Positions 25,646 to 39,600 of a stretch of DNA of 64,000 nt are shown one piece after another. The first letter of the stretch is position 1. Each line of letters begins with the position of its first letter. A model generated the notes under the pieces. It saw nothing but the letters and a program-made list of their open reading frames with translations. It was not told the DNA's origin and searched no databases. The DNA lies in NCBI GenBank assembly GCA_002104905.1, contig MCFE01000124.1:1-64000 (forward strand). The letters run 5' to 3'. The DNA is from Basidiobolus meristosporus CBS 931.73. Its lineage: Eukaryota > Fungi > Basidiobolomycota. A program made the position numbers and the translations under genes.

Positions 25646-27149
25646 ATGATAGCTCCTTTGGTCATCTCAACGTTGGTTATTGTGACCACCGCTTCGGAAT
25701 TTGAGGGGACACTCACCTTGAGTCTTCAAAATAGGATCATCCTTCAAGGCCTTCTCAAACATACAGACAAGCTCCAGCAATTCGCATGCAAACATAATGG
25801 AACGCGCGTTTCCGGGAGTGAGGGACATCAGCTGACCATAGGCTTCGTCTATGGAGTTGTCAAGAAGGCAGGGTACAGGGTTACTCTTCAACAGTTTTCT
25901 GCACTCTACTATGAGTCATTGGCCCAGTCATTATCTGCTAATGGGAAAGAGTTTACTATATATGCAATGCCGCTAATTGCTTCGCCCCCTCGATATGGGC
26001 TTCTAGCACCAGTAGCTCTCGTATCCAGCGCTGCTGGCGACAACGGGAAAGCAGGCTGTGAGGAAGGTGATTTCACCGGTGTTGATCTGAAGGACAAGGT
26101 CGCATTGATGGAGCGTGGCTGTAGCATCACCGATAAGTCAATAAATGCTAAGAAGCATGACGCAGCTGCCTTTATCATCTACAATAATGGACCCGCTGAC
26201 TTTTTTGACGAAGTTGATGATATAGACGAAGAAGTACTCAGTATCCCCACCGGAGGTATCAGCCAGTAGACTGGTGAAGAATTGATTGAGCTTCTTAAGA
26301 GTGGTGAGCCTAACGTAACCTTGAATCTCTCGATGTACATCGAGAATCGCACCACCTACAATGTCCTAGCCGAGACCAAGGGTGGGGACCCAACCAAGGT
26401 AATCTTCCTCGGAGCCCACTCGGATTCGGTTCGTGCTGGTCCAGGTATCAATGACAATGGCTCGGGTAGCGCTGCTCTGCTCGAGGTTGCTCGCCAGTTC
26501 GGCCACACCAGACCCAAGAACAAGGTGCGCTTTGGCTGGTGGTCTGCTGAGGAGTTCGGCCTCCTGGGGTCCGAGCACTATGTCAGCAAGCTGAGCAAGA
26601 CCGATATCGACAGCATTGCAGTCATCCTCAACTTCGATATGATTGCCTCGCCCAACTATGTTATTCGTGTTCTTAACGGGGATTCGAGCGGACAGCCCAC
26701 ACCTGCTGGCTCGGAGGTTGTTACTGCGTTATTCGAGAAGCACTTCCAAGCCAAGGACGTTGTTTACGAGAGTGGCCTCTACCCCTACAGCCGCTCGGAT
26801 GTTGGACCTTTCGCGGCCGTTGGGATTCCCTCCGGAGGTCTTGATACCGGGGCGGACGAGCTCAAGACTGAAGAGGAAGCCAAGAAATTCGGTGGCAAGG
26901 CTGGCCAGCCGTTAGATCCGTGATAACACATCCAACCTCGATTACAACGTTTTTTTGAATATAGCTCGTGGCATTGCCCATGCAGTTGCCACCTATTCTC
27001 ACGATGTGTCCAGTATATCCGAAGCTCGCGGTAGAAAATGGTGGATGAACATCAAGCAACCGCGCCAAAGTGCTCGCTTGACGTCGAATTTGACGAGTTT
27101 GCCAATAGGCCAGTTAATTGCAAGATGTATATTTGTAACACATGTCTGA
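25646..27149 (+). pseudogene. M28 aminopeptidase copy 2, pseudogene
   Basis: Colinear with copy 1. It has an in-frame TAG at 26267-26269 (copy 1 has Glu) and a 17-nt deletion at about 26922 that removes CYHQAC, including the last Zn-ligand His, and shifts the frame. Homology fades after about 27030. Confidence 0.88.
26342..26907. repeat. Right arm of the 566-bp inverted repeat (partner 22878-23443)
   Basis: Near identity with the copy 1 catalytic-domain DNA, while the flanking parts of the two genes are clearly diverged. Confidence 0.9.
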
Positions 27150-27819: not shown

Positions 27820-29913
27820 ATGGAGATACCTATCCCGCTTCAAGTGCAGACGCCCAAGAAAACACCACAAACCGTTTCAGACACTGGGGCTGAACAACCA
27901 GACATCCCCCAGCTGGCGCTGTTGAGAAATCCTGAAGCTTTGACCGAGGCAGCTTTCCTTGAGAGTGCCAAGTTTGGGGAGGAGCAAATAGCGTATGTCC
28001 GAAACATATTTGAACGTATATCTCCAGCCAACACATTCCAAATCAGCAAACCAGAGCACACCGGCGTATTTGTACAGTTCATCAAAGAGCTAGGCTTTGA
28101 AACGGATTTCGCCGAACGATTGTTTCATACTTTCGATAGGGGCAGAAGAGGTGAGATCAGCCTGGATGATTTAGTGTTGGGCTGTGCCGTTCTTGATGTA
28201 TCCACTCCACACAGCTCCGATTCGCCTGCTCTTTTCTGGCGACTGCGCTACATATTTCGTTGTTACAATGTCAGCGGCAGCCGCAAAATGACGTTCGAGG
28301 AATTTCAAATACTTATCTCGCATATAATGGTTTTGCAGAAGCGTACTTTCACCGATGAAGATCTCATGCAAGAGACCTTGGCTGCAGCCCGGAAAATGCC
28401 TACACGAGGTGGAAAGGTTAGCTTCATTGATCGTGATATGCTCATGGAGGCTGTGGCATGTGAGCTGCTAAAGGGTACTGAGCTACTCCTAAGGGCCAGG
28501 AATACACCGTGGAGAAGCAATCAGCTAGGGCATCGTAAAGCCCATAAAATCACCAATGAGCACTTCCAGATGATGGAGCAATTCCAACGGAAATTGGCGC
28601 AGGATTTCAAAGAAGAGCTGTCATCTCTCTCTACCCGAAAGCAGCGTGAGTTCATGATAGCCGTTAACCAACAGCTACTAGAGCAAATCTATCCTCTTCG
28701 ACTTCCTTTCAAAATCAGCAGCCAGGATAATCTATCTTCCTCCCGGAGTGTTAAACTTCAATCAACATACGACATCGGACATAACGTCGAGGGATATGCC
28801 TCCTGCGCCCCACATGAGCCCATTGTTAATGCCAAAAATTCATCAATATCTTGTGCTTTAGCGATTACGGATGAGAGTGATCCATCATTCCATATGGTGG
28901 AGAATCTTGCTAACCGAATCATACAATTCTATTTACTTTCCGAGCCATGGACACCTCCGTCCAACAGAGCCTATAGTTTACTGAGCGTGGAAGAGGTCAA
29001 ATTGATATGCGATTTTCTGGAGAAAGCGTTTCTAGAGGAGGACATGTGTGTCCGGCTAAGTGCGCCTTGTAAGGTGTTTGGCGATGTTCATGGACAGCTC
29101 AACGACCTTCTCGAATTCTTCAAAACGTACGGCTCGCCCAACCCTTACACTGGAGATGTGGTAGATGTCAGCTACGTATTTCTAGGGGATTTCGTAGATC
29201 GAGGCCAGCATTCCGTTGATGTTATCATGTTGCTATTCGCACTTAAAATCAAGTTTCCCACTCGGGTCTTCCTAATCCGCGGCAACCATGAGGACCGTTT
29301 CATCAACCAAACCTACGGATTTTATGCGGAGATGAGCGAAAGATTCCCCAGCACCGCTGCAGTTCCACTTTGGGAGAAGATCAACGATGTGTTCGACTGT
29401 CTGCCCATCGCAGCATTGATTTCCGATCGGATCCTTTGCGTTCATGGTGGTACCGGGCAGGTGAAGTCCTTGGAAGAAATCGAAAGCCTGAAGCGACCAC
29501 TGCGGTTCTCCCAAAACGACGAAACCTCCCTGGCTGCCTTCCACAACATTCTTTGGTCGGATCCAACGGATGGTCCCTCCGAGGTTGGCTTTCATCCCAA
29601 TCCAGCTCGTGGCGCAGGGATAGTGAAGTTTGGCCCAGACATAGTCAAGCAATTCATCAATAGAAACAATCTGGACCTCATCATCCGTGCACATCAGGCC
29701 TGCTCTGCGGGTTACGAATTCTTTGCTGGAGGACATCTAATTACCGTCTTCTCAGCCACGAACTATTGTGGCAAACACGGGAACAACGGAGCCATGCTGT
29801 ACATCAGCTCCGAGCTACAAATTCGTCCAAAGATAGTGAGGCCACAGAGCGAGCACGTCTGGCCAGAGACTCAAAGCGCCCCGCCCAGTCCCCCAAGGTC
29901 TCCTCGGATCTAA
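27820..29913 (+). CDS. PPP-family Ser/Thr phosphatase with N-terminal EF-hand-like region and BSU1/PPKL-like catalytic domain (about 697 aa, intronless)
   Basis: GDVHG, GDFVDRG, RGNHE, HGG, LWSDP, RAHQ and FSATNYCG are all intact. EF-hand-like loops are FDRGRRGEISLDD and YNVSGSRKMTFEE. The first ATG is at 27820. Confidence 0.9.
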   Translation: MEIPIPLQVQTPKKTPQTVSDTGAEQPDIPQLALLRNPEALTEAAFLESAKFGEEQIAYVRNIFERISPANTFQISKPEHTGVFVQFIKELGFETDFAERLFHTFDRGRRGEISLDDLVLGCAVLDVSTPHSSDSPALFWRLRYIFRCYNVSGSRKMTFEEFQILISHIMVLQKRTFTDEDLMQETLAAARKMPTRGGKVSFIDRDMLMEAVACELLKGTELLLRARNTPWRSNQLGHRKAHKITNEHFQMMEQFQRKLAQDFKEELSSLSTRKQREFMIAVNQQLLEQIYPLRLPFKISSQDNLSSSRSVKLQSTYDIGHNVEGYASCAPHEPIVNAKNSSISCALAITDESDPSFHMVENLANRIIQFYLLSEPWTPPSNRAYSLLSVEEVKLICDFLEKAFLEEDMCVRLSAPCKVFGDVHGQLNDLLEFFKTYGSPNPYTGDVVDVSYVFLGDFVDRGQHSVDVIMLLFALKIKFPTRVFLIRGNHEDRFINQTYGFYAEMSERFPSTAAVPLWEKINDVFDCLPIAALISDRILCVHGGTGQVKSLEEIESLKRPLRFSQNDETSLAAFHNILWSDPTDGPSEVGFHPNPARGAGIVKFGPDIVKQFINRNNLDLIIRAHQACSAGYEFFAGGHLITVFSATNYCGKHGNNGAMLYISSELQIRPKIVRPQSEHVWPETQSAPPSPPRSPRI

Positions 29914-30723: not shown

Positions 30724-32913
30724 ATGGCCATAGCAAACAGTAGCCCGAAAGCCGACCCCCCACAAGAGGAGGCTGAGGAAATCTGGTCCACCATCTTGCA
30801 GACGGTTGCCTCGAACAAAATTGTACAATCCAAAAACGTCTTGATTTTAGGTAGGTGGGAATGCGCTCGTTGGCTCTTCTTCAGGGCCTCAAGTCTCCTT
30901 TGTTTCCACCAGGCAAGTTAACCTGTGCTTTTTCCTGGAATCTAGGTGACTCAAATTCGGGGAAGACCTCACTGGCCGATCATCTCAGACGGGTTCCCGA
31001 AGAAACAGGTGCTGGTCCGACGAACGGTGTGTCCGTCGGTACCGATACCTCGGATCTGAAGCACAACCTGAAGAACGAGCTCGCGCTGTCGTATTCGTTC
31101 GTGGATGTCAAAGATGAGGAGAACGAAGGTCTTGTTTAGTTGGGTTTCTTTGCTCCTATGACATGGTTGGATCCTGATTTTTTCCTGGTTCTTCAATAGA
31201 AACGGTGGCCCGTATCGGACTCCACCAGCTGGCCGGCTCTGATGCTGCATATCACCACCTTCTTCGGTTCAGTCTGAATGAGAACACCTTTGCCAACTCT
31301 TTGGCCGTCATTGTTCTTGACTGGTCTAAGCCGTGGACCTTCGTTGAAACATTCGAGAGGTGGATAAAGCTTCTTGAAAGGGCGGTGGCGAGTATCCAGC
31401 ATGGCGAGGGACCGAACAAGGACAGTGGCAGCCGGTGGACGTTTGGCAAATTCGTGGTCGATGAGGCCAAAGAAAAATGTAAGATTTGATTTCTGATGGA
31501 TGTGCAGCTAGGTGCTCGGTTTTTGGTGTATTAATCATGCATTGCAGTGGAGAAATATGTTCAGCAATACGTCGACCCCTCCATCTCAACCACCACATCT
31601 TCGGTGCCCCCCTCCACCATCTCCGCCTCGATGAACAGCGACGTTTTGCTGCCGTTAGGCCCAGGCTGTCTTACCACCAATCTCGGCATCCCACTTGTCG
31701 TTGTGTGCACCAAGGTATTTTTGACGCCCTCCTCCGGGCCGGTTGTATGCAACACAGGGTTAACCATTTCCTTGGTTTAGTCTGATGTGACGGCTCTCCA
31801 CGAGAGAGAAATGGATTTCAGAGAAGAGCAGTTCGACTTTATTCAGCAGACGCTAAGAACTTTATGCCTCAAATGTAAGTCCCTTTTGGCTCGCTCCCCA
31901 CAGGGACCTGGTAACTAACTCCTGTTCGCAGACGGTGCGGCGTTATTCTATACCTCCACTCACCGTCAGGAGACCCTCAGCTCTCTGCGACAATACATCC
32001 TCCATCGCCTGTTGGGGGCCACCTCTGACAGCTCCAGCTCCCTTGTACATACTGCGTTTCCTTTCAATACACGTGCTCAGGTGGTTGAGCGAGACCTGGT
32101 GATTGTACCTTCAGGGTGGGACAGCTGGGGAAAGATCCGAGTGCTGAGGGATGGTTTCGACTGTGAGGTAGTCTCGAGGGCCTTCGAAAAGGATGTTCAC
32201 GCGGAAGATAATGATCCGGACTATGTGGATGTGGTTGGTGCACAGACGTACTTCGAGTCGTTTGTCCAACGGCAGTCGGCCGCAGATCAGGTAAGTTTCC
32301 ACCAGAGACCATGCAATATCCTGACCAAACCCTGACCTTCACAACCACCAAGGCGATGGTCATGAACCCCGTCATCGAAGCTGAGGACGAGCAGACCTTC
32401 CTTGAACGTCATTACGAAGTTCTTCAACGCACTGCAGAGCCTGCAGGCCCGGGTGCTGGCTTATCTCTAGCCAATCCTGCCTATCCAGTCAGCACAAACT
32501 CGGATGATGTGGCTGCGCGATTGGCCAGATTAGCAAAACTGAAGGTAAGTCCCGAACCATCGATCAAATCTGCCCTCGTCTGTACTGATGTTGATCAATA
32601 GGAACAACACGGGATACGTTCATCGTTCACCGCCCCAAGGCCGACCTCTCCAGTTTCCAGTAACAACCCAACCTCCCCCTCCACTCCTAACAGCACCTCG
32701 CCTACGAGCGGTGGCGCGGGAGCCAACCAGAACGAGGTCATCGCCAACTTCTTCCAATCTCTGATCACCCGAAGAGCCTCCTCCGGGGCACTTTCCCCCA
32801 GCGGAAACGCCCCCGGTTCCCCTACCAACGGAAGAATCGCCACATCTACCAGAAGAACCATGGCTAACGAGCTAGATCGACTAAAAATGGCCGCGGGAAA
32901 CCTAACCAAATAA
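30724..32913 (+). CDS. Cytoplasmic dynein 1 light intermediate chain, 8 exons
   Basis: Seven GT-AG introns assemble EIWSTIL..NVLILGDSNSGKTS (P-loop)..IVLDWSKPW..TNLGIPLVVVCTKSD..FDFIQQTLRTLCLKYGAALFYTS..IVPSGWDSWGKI..EDEQTFL..NEVIANFFQSLI, matching the DLIC family. Confidence 0.93.
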
Positions 32914-33310
32914 TCACCCAACATACCAACCCATCTTTTCCCTTTGTTCACCCTTACCTCACCCCACCATCCCACCATCCTATCCATGTACCGAACCCTT
33001 TTGTTTCCAACGCCTACCCATCGCTCTTCGGCGTATCCACCCACCCCTCACCCCGAGGCCGTGTTTAACTTCCCAACCCTAATTGTGTGGAGTGTTCCCT
33101 GGGCGCAACCCAACCACTACCTAACCGGTAGCTTTCATGGAATCGTTCTCAACCATTCCTTTTTCAATCAACCCTGACCGGTTCTCCAATCATGGGCTAT
33201 CGCTTCTCGGCCACCTCAGGCCCTGGCTCGGTCCCACCCATAAAACCTTCCCCCACCCTCTTCCCCCTCAGCCACTCCCAGTTGATTGCAAATTAAAGGA
33301 GCCCTTTACA

Positions 33311-33345
33311 CCCAGCCCAGCCCAGCCCAACCCAACCCGACCCAA
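33311..33345 (+). repeat. Short (CCCAG/CCCAA)n pentamer repeat downstream of DLIC
   Basis: cccagcccagcccagcccaacccaacccgacccaa. Confidence 0.7.
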
Positions 33346-33965
33346 TCCTCACCTCACTTCGCTTAATCTCTTGCGGGTTTGCCCCTCCCCAATGGCTCAT
33401 ACCCATCGGGTGCCACCATACGTGCCCGCCACCTCTCGCATCCACTTCCGGTTGTTTCTCCATCAACAAAAAATTTGACCGAGTTTCGCGTTTGCGGAAA
33501 CCAGCAAATCAGTGAGCGCACTTCCACCATAGCAAAGAGGCCCTGGGGGTATGGCGAGGATCAGTGGGAGGTTGCCCAGGAAGCAGTATGCCAATGATGG
33601 GGCACATTTGTGGATATTTTAGCTCATGAGTACTTACAGTATTCCGGGTAGCACTCTACTTCTTTTACTCACTCATGATAGTGCACTAGTTCCATTCTGT
33701 TGGTAGGTGTCTTTCTGTATGGATATACTGTGCACTGATAAGCCTCTCGACTACCTTGCCTATTTAACTGTGTTTACCTGTATATGATTTGGGCATCAGA
33801 GATCGCAACGTATACAAGTCACAGTGCAGGATCATTGTCCCTGGGTATGAAAACATTGCGGAAACCGATGCAACCACTGGTGAGATTGTCACGGGAGGCT
33901 AGGTCGTTTTGGGGAACCGAGAATTCGTCAATTGCTGAGAATCGGCTTGTTTTGTGTCCAGATTA

Positions 33966-34314
33966 TGTTGTAAGAGTCTTGGAGGTATTGGAAGTGATTG
34001 GGAGAGCAAGTAGATTATGTGGTTCTCACTCGATGGTTTACTGAGTGTAAATGTAGTATTGATACTTTTACATGGTCCTGGCATAATAAACATGTAGAAT
34101 AGGTTCGGGAAGGTCTCAAGAACATGTGCGCAAAGCTTGGCGCTGTTTGGACAACTCATCCAATTTTCATGTTCTGGGTGCCTGGTATTTTGCTGAAAAT
34201 ATTCCAAGTAAATCCCAACAAGGAATTTGGTCGGTATTTTCTAAGATTTGTAGCTTATGATCTAAGCAGCTAGGTTAGGTGAATATTTAGGTGGAATTAC
34301 AAATCTTTACAACA
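33966..34314 (-). repeat. 3' LTR (349 bp) of copia element B
   Basis: TGTTGTAA..TTACAACA termini, adjacent to a polypurine tract (GAGTGGGAG on the minus strand). Homologous to the LTRs at 36243, 41311, 42199/48100 and 49350. Confidence 0.92.
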
Positions 34315-36242
34315 CTCCCACTCAACTGAATTTGTCTTTAGCTAATAGTTTGGTAAATATGTCTGCAATCATTTCATCTGTAGGATAATAAACTAAGTTG
34401 ACCAAGTTCTTCTCTATAGTGTCATGTATGAAACAATGTCTAATATCTATGTGCTTAGTTCTAACATAAAGAGTTGGTTTTCTACCTGATTGTATGCATC
34501 CTTGATTATCTTGAAATAAGGTAGCAGGCGTTTTTTGACATAAGCCTAAATCTTTAAAAAGCTTCCTTAGCCATATTACCTCTTTTGTAGCCTAACCGGC
34601 TGCCATATACTCTGTCTCTGTGGTAGAAAGTGCTACAGTTGGTTGCTTTCTTGAATTCCATGAAATTGCTCCTTTACAGTAAAGAAAGGTGTATCCTGTG
34701 GTGGATCTTCTGACTTCTAAGTTTTGTCCCCAATCAGCATCAGAGTATCCCACAAGATCTTTTTCTGAATCCTTATATGTGTATGTTAAGCTGATATCAG
34801 CAGTTCCTTTTAGATATCTAATAGTCTGCTTAACTGCTGCAATGTGATCAGATCCATGGTTCTGATTAGGCTGGCTGACAACTCCCACTGAAAATGAGAC
34901 ATTAGAATGTGTTCCAAGCAAGATATACAGCTTACTGCCAGCCATGAATTGATAAGGAAAGTTAGGGCTTTCAGATGGCACCAAGCTCTCCTGATTTGGT
35001 TGAGTTTTGACCAAGTTAAGGTGTATCTCCATTGGGGTAGCTGCTGGTTTACAGTGTTCCATTTGATACTGCTTTAATATCTTGAATATATTTGGATTGG
35101 CTTAGGGTGATAGTCTGGGTACTTCTGTCTACAGAGAACTTTATCCATAAGCAGTAACTGAGTTCTCCCAGACTGGACATTTTCAGCTCCTTAGATAGGC
35201 TAGATTTAGTCTCTTCCAATGTTTTGAGGTTAATAGTGGCTATAATAATATCATCCACATATAGAGCTAATAGAACTGGACCTGCTCTATCCGGTTTATT
35301 GTAAATACTATAGTCAGCAGTACTCCTTTGGAGACTCAAAGATTCCAAATAAGTATTTATCTTACAATTCCAGGCCCTTGGTGATAGTTTGAGACCATAT
35401 AGAGATTTTTTAAGCATGCAGACCAAGATCAACAGGCCCATCAGGCTGGCTCATGCACATGTCCCCATTAAGTTCCCCATTTAAAAATACAGTTTTTACA
35501 TCCATTTGATGTATAAAAATTTATATTTGGCTGCAATAGCCAATATCAATTTGATGGAATTAAGCTTGGCAACTTGTGCAAAGGTCTCAGTGTAGTCAAA
35601 TCCTTTTGTTTGAGAGTATCCTTTGGCCACAAGCCTTGCTGTGTACTTGTCAGTTGTACTAGAGCCTTGTATATTGTCTTGAAGATCCATCTGCATCCAA
35701 TTAATTTTGGGTTGATTGGCTAGTTAACTAAGTTCCAAGTTTGATTTTCCATTGGGGCCTTGTACTCTTCACTTATTACAGATCTTCAAAACCTTGTCTG
35801 AGGGCTATTTAGGGCTTCTTCTACAGTCTAGGGCTCATCAATCTGGACTGAATAGGCATAGGCTAAGTTTGTACTCTCATTAATATAGTAATTTGGGCTA
35901 TTTCTGGTCTGGTTAGATATCCTGATTTGTAATAATGGAATGATCACTTCTAGGGTACTCCTAGGCACGGATTCAGGATGAACCATGGTTGTAGAGTCCT
36001 CTGCAGTGAGAAAGTTCTCATTGTTTTACCCTGATTCAATCCAGACCTTTGGTGGAATTGAGATCAGATCTGTCATCAACTGATGTCATTTTTGCAAAAA
36101 ATTGGAATTTCATCAAACAACATATCCCTAGACTTGATTGGCTTCTTTACTTTGGTAATGTAGAGTCTGTATGCTTTGCTCTCATTGCAGTAGCCCAAAA
36201 ATATGCATTTTACACTTTTAGGCTCAAATTTTGACTGCTTTC
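33966..36242 (-). mobile_element. Ty1/copia element B, 3' part (LTR, RNase H, RT, integrase C-terminus), degenerate
   Basis: GYSDADWGQNLEVRRSTTGY, LYVDDIII, LYGLKLSPRAWN and ARLVAKGYSQ. Cut at 36242 by an insertion flanked by the TSD CTTTC. Confidence 0.93.
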
Positions 36243-36591
36243 TGTTGTAAAATTTGTAAATCCACCTAAATATTCACCTAGCTTAGTCACTTAGATCATT
36301 ACCTTCAAGTCTCAGAGAATACTTACTAAAATCCTTGTCAGGATTCACTTTGAACAGTTTCACCAAAATACCAGGTACCCAGAACATGAAAATTCTCAAA
36401 GTTGTTCAATCAGCCCCAAACCTTGCACACATGCCTCTGGAACCTTCCTAAGCCTATTCCCTATGTTTGTCATGCCAAGACCTTATAAAAGCATAAATAC
36501 TACGTTTACATTCAACAATTCATTTAGTGAAAGCCACATAATCTACTTGTCCTCCCAAATCACTTTTGATATCTCCAAGACTCTTACAACA
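36243..36591 (+). repeat. 5' LTR (349 bp) of copia A
   Basis: TGTTGTAA..TTACAACA termini, followed immediately by the primer-binding site (PBS). Confidence 0.93.
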
Positions 36592-36603
36592 GGTTATGAG
36601 CCC
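36592..36603 (+). promoter_or_regulatory. Primer-binding site complementary to the anticodon stem-loop of initiator tRNA-Met (half-tRNA priming)
   Basis: GGTTATGAGCCC is the reverse complement of GGGCTCATAACC of fungal tRNAiMet, as in Ty5/copia-type elements. Confidence 0.85.
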
Positions 36604-36622
36604 CAAGCTCTCACTCTGTACA

Positions 36623-39600
36623 ATGTCTACTGCTACTATTACTGGAATATTTACCTCTGCTAAGAAGTTGAAAAGATGTAACTACTAAGTGTGGAAGGTG
36701 AGGATGAAGATGCTGCTACAAGAAAGAGGCCTTTGGGATATTGTTGTGGGAGAAGAACTCCCTGCTTAAAATGTGGGAGAGGAATCCTTAAAGTATCAGA
36801 AGAAAGAACAAAGTGCCTTTAACTGCATTTGCCTCAATGTCAATGACAATTTGCTAATTTGTTACTCAAGAGCAGAAATGGCAAAGAATGCCCAGAAGGC
36901 ACTAGAAGTCACCTATGAGTCATGTTCAGCTGCAAAGAAAATATATCTTAGACAAAAACTCTTCACCACAAAGATGCTGCCAGGAGAAGAAATGGCAATT
37001 GAAATAACAGAATTACCCTGCTGGTGGATGATATGGAGTCTGTGGGTGTACCAAATACTGATGAGGATGTGATATTAACCATCCTGAATAGCCTGACAGA
37101 TAGGTTTCAGGGCCTTGTATTGGCCCTAAAATCCAGAACTGAAGATTTGACCTTAAATTACATACATGGAAGTTTCCTGGTTGAAGAATTCAGAAAATCA
37201 AGAACTAATAAGAAGGAAGAAGAATATGCTTTAATACGCAATGATAACCAACAAAGGAGATACCCAAGAGCTTTCAAAGGCAATAGCAACCTGTTTTGCA
37301 ACCACTGCAAAAGGAAGGGACACACATCAGACTGGTGCCTGACAAAGAGAGATAGTCAGCAGAAAAAGCCTGAATGTCAAAATGCTGCAACAACTAAAGA
37401 AGGACTATTCATATCTGCACTAAATATGACCACAAACAAGGATCTTCAAAAATGGTATATTGACTCTGGAGCATCTCAATACTTTACACATCAAAATGAA
37501 CTTTTTACCCAATATCAAGAAATTCCAATTATGAAGGTTTTCATGGGTGATGATAGAACACTTGATACAGTGGAAGAAGGAACTATCCTAGTAAACCTAA
37601 GAAGCAGTGTAGGAAGCCATACACTGACCTTTAAAGAAGTATGCTATGTGTCAGATATAGCCAAGAACCTACTATCTGTAAGCAAGGCCACTGCAGAAGG
37701 ACTGAGTTTCAGCATTGACCATTCTGGATGCAGGATCACCGATCAAAATGGTGCCCATATTGCATTGGGTATCAGACAACAGAATCTATATAAGTTGCCT
37801 TATATTCCATCATATCTGGAAGCCAATATAATTAACTTTGATGAAGAAACACCAATACTTTGCCACAGGATATTTGGACACATCTATTTTGATTATTTGC
37901 GGAAAATGACCAAAAATCAGCAAATTTCCAGAGTAAAAATTAATCCCCCATCTAATTTGGAGCACTGTGAAGCCTGCATATATGGGAAACAAGCAAGACA
38001 ACTGTTCAAGAGCTCTGGGTTAATCAAAACTAGAAAATATTAGCCCCAACTCACTCATATCTGTGTTGACCTATGCAAAATTTATCCTTAGGTGGGATGA
38101 AGTATTGAGTTACTTTTATAGATGATTACACAAGACACGTGCGGGTCTACCTCATGGAAGGAAAGGAAGAAGCACTGTCCAAGTTCAGGGAGTTTAAAAC
38201 CATAGTGGAGAGAGAATCTGGTGAAAAAACTCAAGATAATACACACTGACAATGGTGGAGAATATACCTCAAAACTATTCATCCATTTCTGCAAAATTCA
38301 AGGGATAGAGCAAGAGACTACTGCACCATACTCCCCACAGCAAAATGGAGTAGCAGAACAAGCTAACAGATCAATAATTGATATGGCAAGATCTATAATC
38401 TATGATCAAAAATTATCCTATGATTTTTGGGTGTAATCAGTTGCCACTGCTGTATATCTTAAAAATAAGAGTTATAACAGAATACTTTGTGATTCTACTC
38501 CACTTGAAGCATGGTATGGATACAGACCAAGTGCAGAATATCTAAGAATATTTGGGTGTACAGCATATGCCAAAAAACTGGCCAGAAATCAGTCAAAATT
38601 TGAGCCAAAAAGTGTAAAATGCATATTTTTGGGCTGCTGCAATGAGAGTAAGGCATACAGACTCTACAATACCAAAGCAAAGAAGCTGATCAAGTCCAGG
38701 GATGTGTTGTTTGATGAAAATTCAAAATTTCACAAAAAATGACATAAGATGATGACAAAAATTTGATCTCAAGTCCACTAATTGTCAGGATTGAATCAGA
38801 GCATAACAATGAAAGTTTTTTCACTTCAGAGAACTTTATAACCATGTTTCAGCCAGAATCAGTGCCCAGGAATATCCCAGAAGTGATCATTCCAGTATCA
38901 AATGCCCGGAGATCCAATTGGACAAGAAATAGCCCAAATTACTATATCAATGAGGGTACAAACTTAGCCTATGCCTATTCAGTCCATATTGATGAACCCC
39001 AGACTGTAAAAGAGGCTCTAAATAGCCCTCAGAAAAAGTTTTGGAGATCTGCAATGACTGAGGAATATCAGGCCTTGATGGAAAATCAAACTTGGGACTT
39101 AGTCATATTACCAATCAACCAAAATTCAATTGGATGCAGATGGGTCTTCAAGACAAAATACAAGGCTGAAGGTACAATTGAAAGATACAAAGCAAGACTT
39201 GTAGCCAAAGGATACTCTCAAACAAAAGGACTTGACTATACTGAGACCTTTGCACAAGTTGCCAAGTTTAATTCCATCAGATTAATATTTGCTATTGCAG
39301 CCAAATATAAGTTTTTTATTCATCAAATGGATGTAAAAACTGTATTCTTGAGTGGAGAACTTGATGAGGACTTGTATATGGACCAGCCTAATGGGTTTGC
39401 TGACCAAGATAACCCCCATTTGGTCTGCAAGCCTATAAAGTCACTATATGGTCTCAAACAATCACTGAGAGCCTGGAATTGCAAGATAGATTCTTATTTG
39501 GAATCTTTGAGTTTCAAAAGGAGTAATGCTGACTATAGTATATACTATAAGCCAGATAGAGCAAATCCAGTTCTAATAGTGCTATATGTGGATGATCTTA

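What the first reader, a model, noticed from the sequence alone, without database searches (positions are those of the whole stretch)
27820..29913. Fungal phosphatase with a BSU1/PPKL-type catalytic domain carrying EF-hands instead of Kelch repeats
Seen: a fully intact PPP catalytic domain with features I associate with the plant/alveolate BSU1/PPKL clade (YG.P....GDV...YVFLGDFVDRGQHS; P..ARG.G.V.FGPD; LITVFSATNYCG...NNGA.L; PKIVRP followed by W and a PPSPPR tail). It is preceded by two calcineurin-B/NCS-like EF-hand loops and a long helical linker. Known: PPKLs are described from green plants and alveolates, PPEF/RdgC carries EF-hands C-terminally, and apicomplexan EFPP has N-terminal EF-hands but is considered degenerate. 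Inference: an active, self-contained Ca2+-regulated phosphatase of a clade not generally recognised in fungi. Being intronless, it could reflect horizontal transfer or patchy retention of an ancient family.
Basis: partly seen in the sequence, partly recalled or inferred. Interest (0 to 1): 0.74.

Follow-up and report, generated by a model that had tools for sequence, protein, structure and literature searches.

The report
Fungal EF-hand Bsu1 phosphatase, already reported
This intact gene of the early-diverging fungus Basidiobolus meristosporus joins a calcium-sensor-like EF-hand domain to a plant-BSU1-type protein phosphatase domain, but this very gene was already described as an "EF-hand Bsu1" in 2021, and its calcium-binding loops look degenerate.

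Summary
Window 27820-29913 (+) is one uninterrupted 697-aa ORF with an N-terminal four-EF-hand domain (CBL/calcineurin-B/NCS-like fold), a helical and disordered linker, a complete PPP catalytic domain and a PP1/BSU1-like C-terminal tail (PPS690PPR). The catalytic domain scores 335 bits to Arabidopsis BSU1 against about 230 to PP1. In my ML tree it falls in the Bsu1-type clade (support 100/99). Grouping it with canonical PP1 is rejected (AU p 0.0002). It sits outside the Kelch clade, among the EF-type relatives (97/80). The finding is not new. Horizontal transfer versus ancient retention is unresolved. No function has been tested.

The parts
27820..29913 (+). Complete single-exon coding sequence, 697 aa plus stop: EF-hand Bsu1-type Ser/Thr phosphatase
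   Evidence: Uninterrupted ORF. One environmental homologue (P0242) aligns to residues 48-694 in a single stretch. Identical from residue 109 on to the B. meristosporus sequence in Kerk et al. 2021 supplement.
27937..28509 (+). Four-EF-hand regulatory domain (residues about 40-230), CBL/SOS3, calcineurin B and NCS-like fold
   Evidence: AlphaFold2 pLDDT 88-97 over most of residues 40-230, with four helix-loop-helix units each carrying a short beta bridge. Foldseek against the PDB: SOS3/CBL2, calcineurin B, NCS-1, hippocalcin and CHP, E 3e-6 to 5e-4, probability 1.00, target TM 0.55-0.68. Homologous to the N-terminal domains of about 29 other proteins carrying Bsu1-type catalytic domains.
28135..28170 (+). 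EF2 loop, residues 106-117, DRGRRGEISLDD: lacks side-chain ligands at loop positions 3 (G) and 5 (R)
   Evidence: The aligned loop in relatives is canonical, e.g. DRNQDGFLNESD and DEDGDGRVDFHE.
28267..28302 (+). EF3 loop, residues 150-161, NVSGSRKMTFEE: N at position 1 and R at position 6; keeps S3, S5 and E12
   Evidence: 12 of 19 relatives have a fully canonical loop here.
28510..28881 (+). Linker: two long helices (residues about 239-293), then a low-confidence Ser-rich stretch (about 294-354)
   Evidence: AF2 secondary structure and pLDDT; poorly conserved in alignment A2.
28882..29859 (+). Bsu1-type PPP catalytic domain (residues about 355-680) with all metal-binding and catalytic motifs
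   Evidence: Pfam Metallophos; BSU1 335 bits against PP1 about 230; motifs; pLDDT mostly above 90; ML tree and AU tests.
29860..29910 (+). C-terminal tail W681-PETQSA-PPS690PPR-SPRI. Proline-directed Ser in a CDK-type S-P-x-R context, aligned with BSU1 PPT785PAR
   Evidence: Alignment A1 with BSU1 (P0004, 793 aa) and EF-type relatives. BSU1 Thr785 is phosphorylated by CDK1-cyclin B-CKS1 and the tail blocks the active site (bioRxiv 10.64898/2026.01.06.697939). Identical in B. ranarum.

Best explanation
The gene encodes a member of the EF-hand branch of the Bsu1 (BSU1/BSL/PPKL-related) family of PP1-like Ser/Thr phosphatases. Kerk et al. 2021 already described that branch, including this gene. 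Shown here: the catalytic domain has every residue needed for two-metal PPP catalysis and belongs to the Bsu1-type clade. The N-terminal accessory domain is a four-EF-hand module of the CBL, calcineurin B and NCS kind, attached in cis and homologous to the accessory domains of protist relatives. The gene is under purifying selection and sits at a conserved chromosomal position in two Basidiobolus species. Inferred: it is an active Mn2+/metal-dependent Ser/Thr phosphatase (about 0.85). Its activity is gated by phosphorylation of Ser690 in the PPSPPR tail by a proline-directed (CDK-type) kinase, and the phospho-tail then occupies the active site as in BSU1 and PP1 (about 0.5). The EF-hand domain acts as an intramolecular regulatory or targeting module. 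In Basidiobolus that module has probably lost most or all canonical Ca2+ binding (about 0.6-0.7) and works as a structural or peptide-clamping domain rather than a Ca2+ switch.
For: ORF and motifs intact. Pfam Metallophos and EF-hand. Best solved relative is BSU1, 335 bits against about 230 for PP1; reciprocally, a true PP1 (P0339) scores 758 to PP1 and 253 to BSU1. Careful ML tree of 77 catalytic domains: Bsu1-type clade 100/99; Kelch clade with BSU1 100/99, excluding this gene; this gene plus B. ranarum inside a 37-row clade with 21 EF-type and 0 Kelch rows, 97/80. AU test rejects grouping with canonical PP1 (delta lnL 126, p 0.0002). The N-terminal domain hits the N-terminal domains of 21 other Bsu1-type proteins by phmmer. 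AF2 plus Foldseek give a four-EF-hand CBL/CnB/NCS fold. The tail aligns with the BSU1 tail, whose CDK1 phosphorylation and autoinhibition are shown experimentally. The B. ranarum orthologue is 90-91% identical with dN 0.054 and saturated synonymous sites, and both species have the same downstream DLIC gene. Kerk et al. 2021 placed this same sequence with the Bsu1s in ML and Bayesian trees and labelled its accessory domain 'EF Hands'.
Against: No biochemical or expression data: no RNA run was listed. Placement inside the Bsu1-type clade is soft. A basal position (AU p 0.22) and a sister position to the Kelch clade (p 0.096) are not rejected, and the Basidiobolus stem branch is long (0.59). My tree has only PP1-side outgroups; the distance to PP2A, PP2B and PP5 rests on bit scores and on the published trees. 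The tail has Ser where BSU1 and PP1 have Thr, and it is low-confidence in the unphosphorylated AF2 model. Non-canonical EF loops can still bind Ca2+ in some CBL/NCS proteins, so loss of Ca2+ binding is an inference from sequence. AF2 gave no confident docking of the EF domain on the catalytic domain (pTM 0.55).
Confidence: 0.8

Rival explanations
1. One reading: a self-contained Ca2+-activated phosphatase, in which Ca2+ binding to the N-terminal EF-hands switches the catalytic domain on or off, like calcineurin with its B subunit fused in cis.
For: The fold is that of Ca2+ sensors that regulate partner enzymes, such as calcineurin B and SOS3/CBL. Many relatives keep canonical loops at EF2 and EF3 (7 and 12 of 19), so the ancestral protein was probably Ca2+-responsive. 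EF3 here retains S3, S5, T9 and E12. EF-hand_6 passes Pfam's cut-off.
Against: None of the four loops is canonical. EF2 has G and R at ligand positions 3 and 5. EF3 has N at position 1 and R at the Gly6 position. EF1 (SPANTFQISKPE) and EF4 (KMPTRGGKVSF...) have almost no acidic ligands. EF-hand_7 and EF-hand_1 are below Pfam's cut-offs. Other family members (P0005, P0008, P0013, P0291) also have degenerate loops, so a Ca2+-independent state recurs in the family.
Confidence: 0.3
2. On origin: the gene reached the Basidiobolus lineage by horizontal transfer from a protist, rather than being retained from the opisthokont ancestor.
For: No named fungus other than Basidiobolus appeared among the best hits of a search over representatives of about 15 billion proteins. 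Identity falls from 91% (B. ranarum) to 49% or less. It is a single 2.1-kb exon, while at least the neighbouring DLIC gene is split. In the trees the pair does not group with Thecamonas and sits among assorted protist sequences.
Against: Composition matches the flanks: GC 0.488 against 0.485 and 0.516. The gene is present with conserved synteny in two species, so any transfer predates their split. Choanoflagellates and the apusomonad Thecamonas carry the same architecture, so presence in the opisthokont ancestor followed by loss is a sufficient explanation, and it is the one Kerk et al. favour. Relationships within the clade are unresolved, so no donor is indicated. Most hits carry no taxon name, so unnamed fungal members cannot be excluded.
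Confidence: 0.3
3. A divergent member of an ordinary fungal PP1-type group (Glc7, Ppz, Ppq) that only resembles BSU1 by convergence or long-branch effects.
For: The Basidiobolus stem branch is long (0.59-0.82). A position at the very base of the Bsu1-type clade, next to the PP1 side, is not rejected (p 0.22).
Against: A 105-bit advantage of BSU1 over every PP1 structure, including yeast PP1. All of the roughly 120 best hits of the exhaustive search that entered the tree fall in the Bsu1-type clade. The AU test rejects a clade with canonical PP1 (p 0.0002). The accessory domain is homologous to those of other Bsu1-type proteins. At the three strict diagnostic columns it has the Bsu1 state twice and the PP1 state never.
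Confidence: 0.03
4. Contaminant or assembly artefact: the gene is not part of the fungal genome.
For: An unusual taxonomic distribution is a classic sign of contamination.
Against: It lies between an M28 peptidase gene and a dynein light intermediate chain gene on one contig. An independent assembly of B. ranarum (GCA_040143965.1) has the orthologue next to the same DLIC gene. Base composition equals that of the flanks. Kerk et al. recovered it from the CBS 931.73 whole-genome contigs.
Confidence: 0.01

Closest known systems
EF-hand Bsu1s of Kerk et al. 2021 (Sci Rep 11:13681; e.g. Thecamonas trahens XP_013758396.1 = P0244, Monosiga, Salpingoeca, Nannochloropsis, and this Basidiobolus gene)
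   Same: N-terminal EF-hand accessory domain plus Bsu1-type catalytic domain and no Kelch repeats. The accessory domains are homologous, with a shared signature F..FD(R)..DG...TPH...LRL.YIF..YD...G...GTS.LFR. This very sequence is in their table.
   Different: The published Basidiobolus sequence starts at residue 109; the window gives the whole ORF. Basidiobolus has lost canonical ligands in both EF loops that Thecamonas (EF3) and many others keep.
Arabidopsis BSU1/BSL1-3 and other Kelch phosphatases (PPKL) of plants, green algae and alveolates
   Same: Catalytic domain 45-49% identical and the best solved match (9tp7, 335 bits). Shared C-terminal W-x5-PP[S/T]PxR tail, which in BSU1 is the CDK1-phosphorylated autoinhibitory tail.
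   Different: No Kelch beta-propeller. The gene lies outside the well-supported Kelch clade (100/99), though a sister position is not formally rejected (p 0.096). It has GDFVDRG rather than GDYVDRG, and Ser instead of Thr at the tail site.
Apicomplexan EFPP (e.g. Cryptosporidium XP_626384.1, Toxoplasma TGGT1_269460, Plasmodium EFPP)
   Same: N-terminal EF-hands on a PPP domain. In Kerk et al.'s supplementary table Cryptosporidium XP_626384.1 carries the 'EF Hands' label shortly before the Thecamonas EF-hand Bsu1 entry.
   Different: Apicomplexan proteins are much larger (Toxoplasma 218 kDa) with insertions. Toxoplasma EFPP is cytoplasmic and dispensable in tachyzoites (PMC8785970). I did not place a named EFPP in my own tree.
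PPEF/RdgC
   Same: A PPP catalytic domain fused to EF-hands in one polypeptide.
   Different: In PPEF the EF-hands are C-terminal and the catalytic domain belongs to the PP5/PP7/PPEF group (Kerk et al.). Here the EF-hands are N-terminal and the catalytic domain is on the PP1/Bsu1 side (PP5 only 165 bits).
Calcineurin (PP2B: catalytic A subunit plus calcineurin B)
   Same: A PPP catalytic domain paired with a four-EF-hand calcineurin-B-like module (fold match to CnB).
   Different: In calcineurin the sensor is a separate subunit with four working Ca2+ sites, and the catalytic domain is PP2B-type. Here the module is fused N-terminally, its loops are degenerate, and the catalytic domain is Bsu1-type.
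PP1 (Glc7/PP1 alpha, beta, gamma)
   Same: Same fold and active site. The C-terminal proline-directed site is comparable to PP1 alpha Thr320 in the PxTPP motif.
   Different: About 105 bits further away than BSU1. A clade with canonical PP1 is rejected. PP1 has no fused regulatory domain.

Membership tests
PPP superfamily (active Ser/Thr phosphatase) | Motifs GDxHG, GDxVDRG, GNHE, HGG, RG, H (RAH) and SAxNY | tested here: met
   GDVHG 421, GDFVDRG 456, GNHE 488, HGG 542, ARG 596, RAH 623, SATNY 645; Pfam Metallophos E 8e-36.
Bsu1/BSU1-BSL/PPKL-type catalytic clade | Catalytic domain closer to BSU1 than to PP1, PP2A, PP2B or PP5 by sequence | tested here: met
   BSU1 335 bits; PP1 about 230; the 9b9g_I chain labelled PP3/calcineurin A 224; PP2A 185; PP5 165. 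Reciprocal control: PP1 P0339 scores 758 to PP1 and 253 to BSU1.
Bsu1/BSU1-BSL/PPKL-type catalytic clade | Phylogenetic placement inside the clade, apart from PP1 | tested here: met
   Clade support 100/99. AU test rejects grouping with canonical PP1, p 0.0002. Caveat: a basal position within the clade is not rejected (p 0.22). Only PP1-side outgroups were used.
PPKL sensu stricto (phosphatase with Kelch-like repeats) | N-terminal Kelch beta-propeller | tested here: not met
   No Kelch family in Pfam. phmmer with the BSU1 Kelch region hits 130 proteins of the set but neither this one nor any EF-type protein. So it is not a PPKL in the strict sense, only a relative of its catalytic domain.
Bsu1/PP1 regulatory tail | C-terminal proline-directed Ser/Thr (PxTPP-like) followed by a basic residue | tested here: met
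   W681...PPS690PPR aligns with BSU1 PPT785PAR (the function of the BSU1 tail is). Phosphorylation itself is not testable here.
EF-hand Bsu1 subgroup (Kerk et al. 2021) | EF-hand accessory domain homologous to that of other members | tested here: met
   phmmer with residues 1-260 hits 21 other Bsu1-type proteins at E below 1e-3, best 1e-13. Conserved signature in A2. The authors list this same sequence.
EF-hand Bsu1 subgroup (Kerk et al. 2021) | Catalytic domain groups with other EF-type members rather than with the Kelch clade | tested here: inconclusive
   The careful tree puts it in a 37-row clade with 21 EF and 0 Kelch rows (97/80). A sister position to the Kelch clade (p 0.096) or a basal position (p 0.22) is not rejected.
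Four-EF-hand sensor fold (calcineurin B, CBL/SOS3, NCS, CHP) | Two pairs of helix-loop-helix motifs forming the compact CnB/NCS-like domain | tested here: met
   AF2 pLDDT 88-97 over most of residues 40-230, four helix-loop-helix units. Foldseek top 50 are all such proteins, E 3e-6 to 5e-4.
Canonical Ca2+-binding EF-hand | 12-residue loop with D at 1, D/N/S at 3 and 5, G at 6, E/D at 12 | tested here: not met
   EF2 DRGRRGEISLDD fails positions 3 and 5. EF3 NVSGSRKMTFEE fails positions 1 and 6. EF1 and EF4 lack most ligands. Actual Ca2+ binding is not testable with these tools.
PPEF/RdgC | EF-hands C-terminal to the catalytic domain | tested here: not met
   The EF domain is at residues 40-230 and the catalytic domain at 355-680. 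No PPEF sequence was compared directly.

The most novel reading that the evidence does not exclude
Basidiobolus keeps the only known fungal remnant of an ancestral opisthokont EF-hand Bsu1 phosphatase, and in this lineage it has become Ca2+-independent. Control has shifted to CDK phosphorylation of the PPS690PPR tail. That would make it an opisthokont counterpart of the plant and algal BSL cell-cycle phosphatases, which are currently called plant-specific.
Probability: 0.2. Interest if true: 0.45.

Novelty: already known. Interest (0 to 1): 0.2.

Why it matters
Bsu1/BSL phosphatases are usually presented as specific to plants and alveolates, and recent work ties them to CDK control of the cell cycle. 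A fungal member with an EF-hand domain shows that the family predates that split and that its catalytic domain has been paired with two different accessory domains. Kerk et al. made that point in 2021 using this very gene, so nothing conceptual is added here. What remains open is entirely experimental. Nobody has shown what any EF-hand Bsu1 does, whether it senses Ca2+, or whether the CDK-gated tail mechanism found in BSU1 also operates outside plants. Basidiobolus is culturable, so this gene is a reasonable handle on those questions.

Tried and rejected
- RNA evidence: the look-up of sequencing runs listed no run. Expression and transcript ends are untested.
- B. ranarum N-terminus: the only contig with the orthologue ends 64 bases upstream of the 228-aa fragment. 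Conservation of the degenerate EF loops in the sister species could not be checked.
- First tree: the quick search on 151 rows was under-optimised, and a constrained tree scored 14.8 log units better. I replaced it with a 77-row careful search and repeated the AU tests there.
- Diagnostic-column count: only 3 strict PP1-versus-Bsu1 columns and 2 Kelch-versus-EF columns. The result is consistent but too few to carry weight.
- Full-length AlphaFold2: pTM 0.55, disordered linker and low-confidence tail, so it says nothing reliable about how the EF domain or the tail contacts the catalytic domain.
- NCBIfam gave only distant prokaryotic metallophosphoesterase hits.
- Earlier scan notes: none near this place and none mentioning BSU1 or PPKL.
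- Naming of hits: 30 look-ups gave only a handful of taxon names, so the taxonomic survey is incomplete.
Full report
**What is there.** Window 27820-29913 (+) is a single open reading frame of 697 codons plus stop, starting at the first ATG of a slightly longer open frame. Pfam finds a Metallophos domain at residues 419-627 (E 8e-36) and EF-hand models at 99-168. EF-hand_6 passes its cut-off; EF-hand_7 and EF-hand_1 fall just below theirs. Every PPP signature is intact: GDVHG 421, GDFVDRG 456, GNHE 488, HGG 542, ARG 596, RAH 623 and SATNY 645. The protein ends in W681-PETQSA-PPS690PPR-SPRI.

**Which phosphatase.**
- Against all solved structures the best match is the Arabidopsis BSU1 phosphatase domain: 9tp7, 335 bits over residues 360-677. 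PP1 scores about 230, PP2A 185 and PP5 165.
- As a control, a true PP1 from my hit list (P0339) scores 758 to PP1 and 253 to BSU1.
- An exhaustive HMMER search of 1.84 billion cluster representatives gave one close relative: P0121, 91% identical, from Basidiobolus ranarum and annotated 'bsl1'. After that come only hits of 49% identity or less.
- I built an ML tree of 77 catalytic domains (IQ-TREE, LG+C20+F+G4 PMSF, ultrafast bootstrap / SH-aLRT). The rows left out were P0236, P0239, P0252 and P0273 (very long envelopes); P0314, P0323, P0325 and P0364 (short coverage); the long-branch rows P0334 and P0335; and many redundant rows of the first 151-row set.
- The Bsu1-type clade separates from the PP1-side sequences with 100/99.
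- The Kelch-bearing clade that contains BSU1 (P0004) has 100/99 and excludes this gene.
- The Basidiobolus pair lies in a 37-row clade (97/80) holding 21 proteins with the EF-type accessory domain and none with Kelch repeats.
- AU tests: a clade with canonical PP1 is rejected (delta lnL 126, p 0.0002). A position at the base of all Bsu1-type sequences (p 0.22) and a sister position to the Kelch clade (p 0.096) are worse but not rejected.
- So family membership is solid and the exact branch is soft. My tree lacks named PP2A, PP2B, PP5, PP7 and PPEF sequences; for those I rely on the bit scores and on the published trees.

**The accessory domain.**
- AlphaFold2 on an alignment of 20 non-catalytic regions (A2) predicts residues 40-230 with pLDDT 88-97 over most of the range. 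The model has four helix-loop-helix units, each with the short beta bridge of an EF loop.
- Foldseek against the PDB returns only four-EF-hand sensors: SOS3/CBL2, calcineurin B, NCS-1, hippocalcin, KChIP and CHP. E-values run from 3e-6 to 5e-4, probability is 1.00 and target TM is 0.55-0.68.
- The domain is not a generic EF-hand. phmmer with residues 1-260 finds the accessory domains of 21 other Bsu1-type proteins. Alignment A2 shows a shared signature, F..FD(R)..DG...TPH...LRL.YIF..YD...G...GTS.LFR.
- None of the four loops in this protein is canonical. EF2 (DRGRRGEISLDD) has Gly and Arg at ligand positions 3 and 5. EF3 (NVSGSRKMTFEE) has Asn at position 1 and Arg at the Gly6 position. EF1 and EF4 have almost no acidic ligands.
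- Among 19 relatives, 7 keep a fully canonical EF2 loop and 12 a fully canonical EF3 loop.
- The family was therefore probably Ca2+-responsive originally, but Ca2+ switching in Basidiobolus is doubtful. This is an inference from sequence only.

**The tail.** In alignment A1 the C-terminal PPS690PPR aligns with PPT785PAR of BSU1, and the same W-x5-PP[S/T]PxR pattern occurs in EF-type relatives. A 2026 preprint with the BSU1 structure shows that Thr785 is phosphorylated by CDK1-cyclin B-CKS1. The phospho-tail lies across the active site, Arg788 contacts the acidic groove, and T785A activates the enzyme, as in PP1 (10.64898/2026.01.06.697939). The Basidiobolus tail has the Ser-Pro-x-Arg form of a CDK site and is identical in B. 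ranarum. I infer the same gating mechanism. It is not shown.

**Genomic setting and selection.**
- The gene lies between an M28 peptidase gene and a dynein light intermediate chain (DLIC) gene.
- The B. ranarum contig carrying the orthologue (GCA_040143965.1) has the same DLIC gene downstream.
- Over the 228 shared codons dN is 0.054 and synonymous sites are saturated.
- GC content of the gene (0.488) equals that of its flanks.
- The gene is therefore a resident, constrained fungal gene that predates the split of the two species.
- It is a single exon, whereas the neighbouring DLIC gene is split.

**Prior knowledge.**
- An earlier scan note named the genome as Basidiobolus meristosporus.
[quoted passage not shown] They concluded that the two architectures diverged very early in eukaryotes.
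- Their supplementary table prints the B. meristosporus CBS 931.73 sequence, obtained by TBLASTN to extend the shorter model ORX97883.1. As far as the passage shows (about 400 residues), it reads letter for letter as this ORF from Arg109 onward (compared). That also confirms the organism independently.
- One of my hits, P0244, is their Thecamonas protein.
- Cryptosporidium XP_626384.1 appears in the same table labelled 'EF Hands', so apicomplexan EFPP-type proteins seem to belong here too.
- The only functional data I found for any EF-hand member are that Toxoplasma EFPP is cytoplasmic and dispensable in tachyzoites (PMC8785970).

**Distribution.** Named taxa among my EF-type or neighbouring hits are Thecamonas, Diphylleia, Prymnesium, Gymnodinium, Epipyxis, Cymbomonas and Effrenium. 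Most hits are unnamed environmental sequences, and no fungus other than Basidiobolus appears. Because the same architecture occurs in choanoflagellates and an apusomonad, retention from the opisthokont ancestor with many losses is sufficient. Transfer into the Basidiobolus lineage is not excluded, and the tree does not resolve a donor.

**Verdict.**
- It is already published for this very gene, so novelty is 'already known' and interest is low.
- The 'Ca2+-regulated' inference is weakened by the degenerate loops.
- No RNA run was listed, so expression is untested.

Noticed in passing
P0320 and P0338 (Diphylleia rotans), P0334 (unnamed): In these three Bsu1-type proteins the EF-type domain lies C-terminal to the catalytic domain (e.g. 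P0320 catalytic 134-422, EF 460-676). This is a permuted domain order within the same catalytic clade.
   Followed up: no
window 27820-28143: The sequence published for this gene (Kerk et al. 2021 supplement) starts at residue 109. The window ORF adds 108 N-terminal residues, including EF1 and the entering helix of EF2. According to that paper the database model ORX97883.1 is shorter still.
   Followed up: partly
L001:65-751 (B. ranarum JASJQH010009230.1): The B. ranarum orthologue is annotated 'Serine/threonine-protein phosphatase bsl1'. It is only a 228-aa fragment, because the contig ends 64 bases upstream.
   Followed up: yes
window 30724-32547 (+): A dynein light intermediate chain gene with introns, 68% identical in DNA to the gene downstream of the B. 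ranarum orthologue: conserved synteny.
   Followed up: partly
window 26282-26923 (+): An ORF piece with a Peptidase_M28 domain (E 3e-39), probably one exon of a secreted aminopeptidase gene upstream of the phosphatase.
   Followed up: no
window 32500-38000: GC falls from about 0.53 to about 0.38 from roughly 33.5 kb onward. It is preceded by a strong negative GC skew (-0.376) at 32500-33499.
   Followed up: no
P0246 (1216 aa), P0335 (2720 aa), P0252 (1301 aa): Very long proteins that combine the EF-type domain and a Bsu1-type catalytic domain with much additional sequence, reminiscent of the large apicomplexan EFPPs.
   Followed up: no
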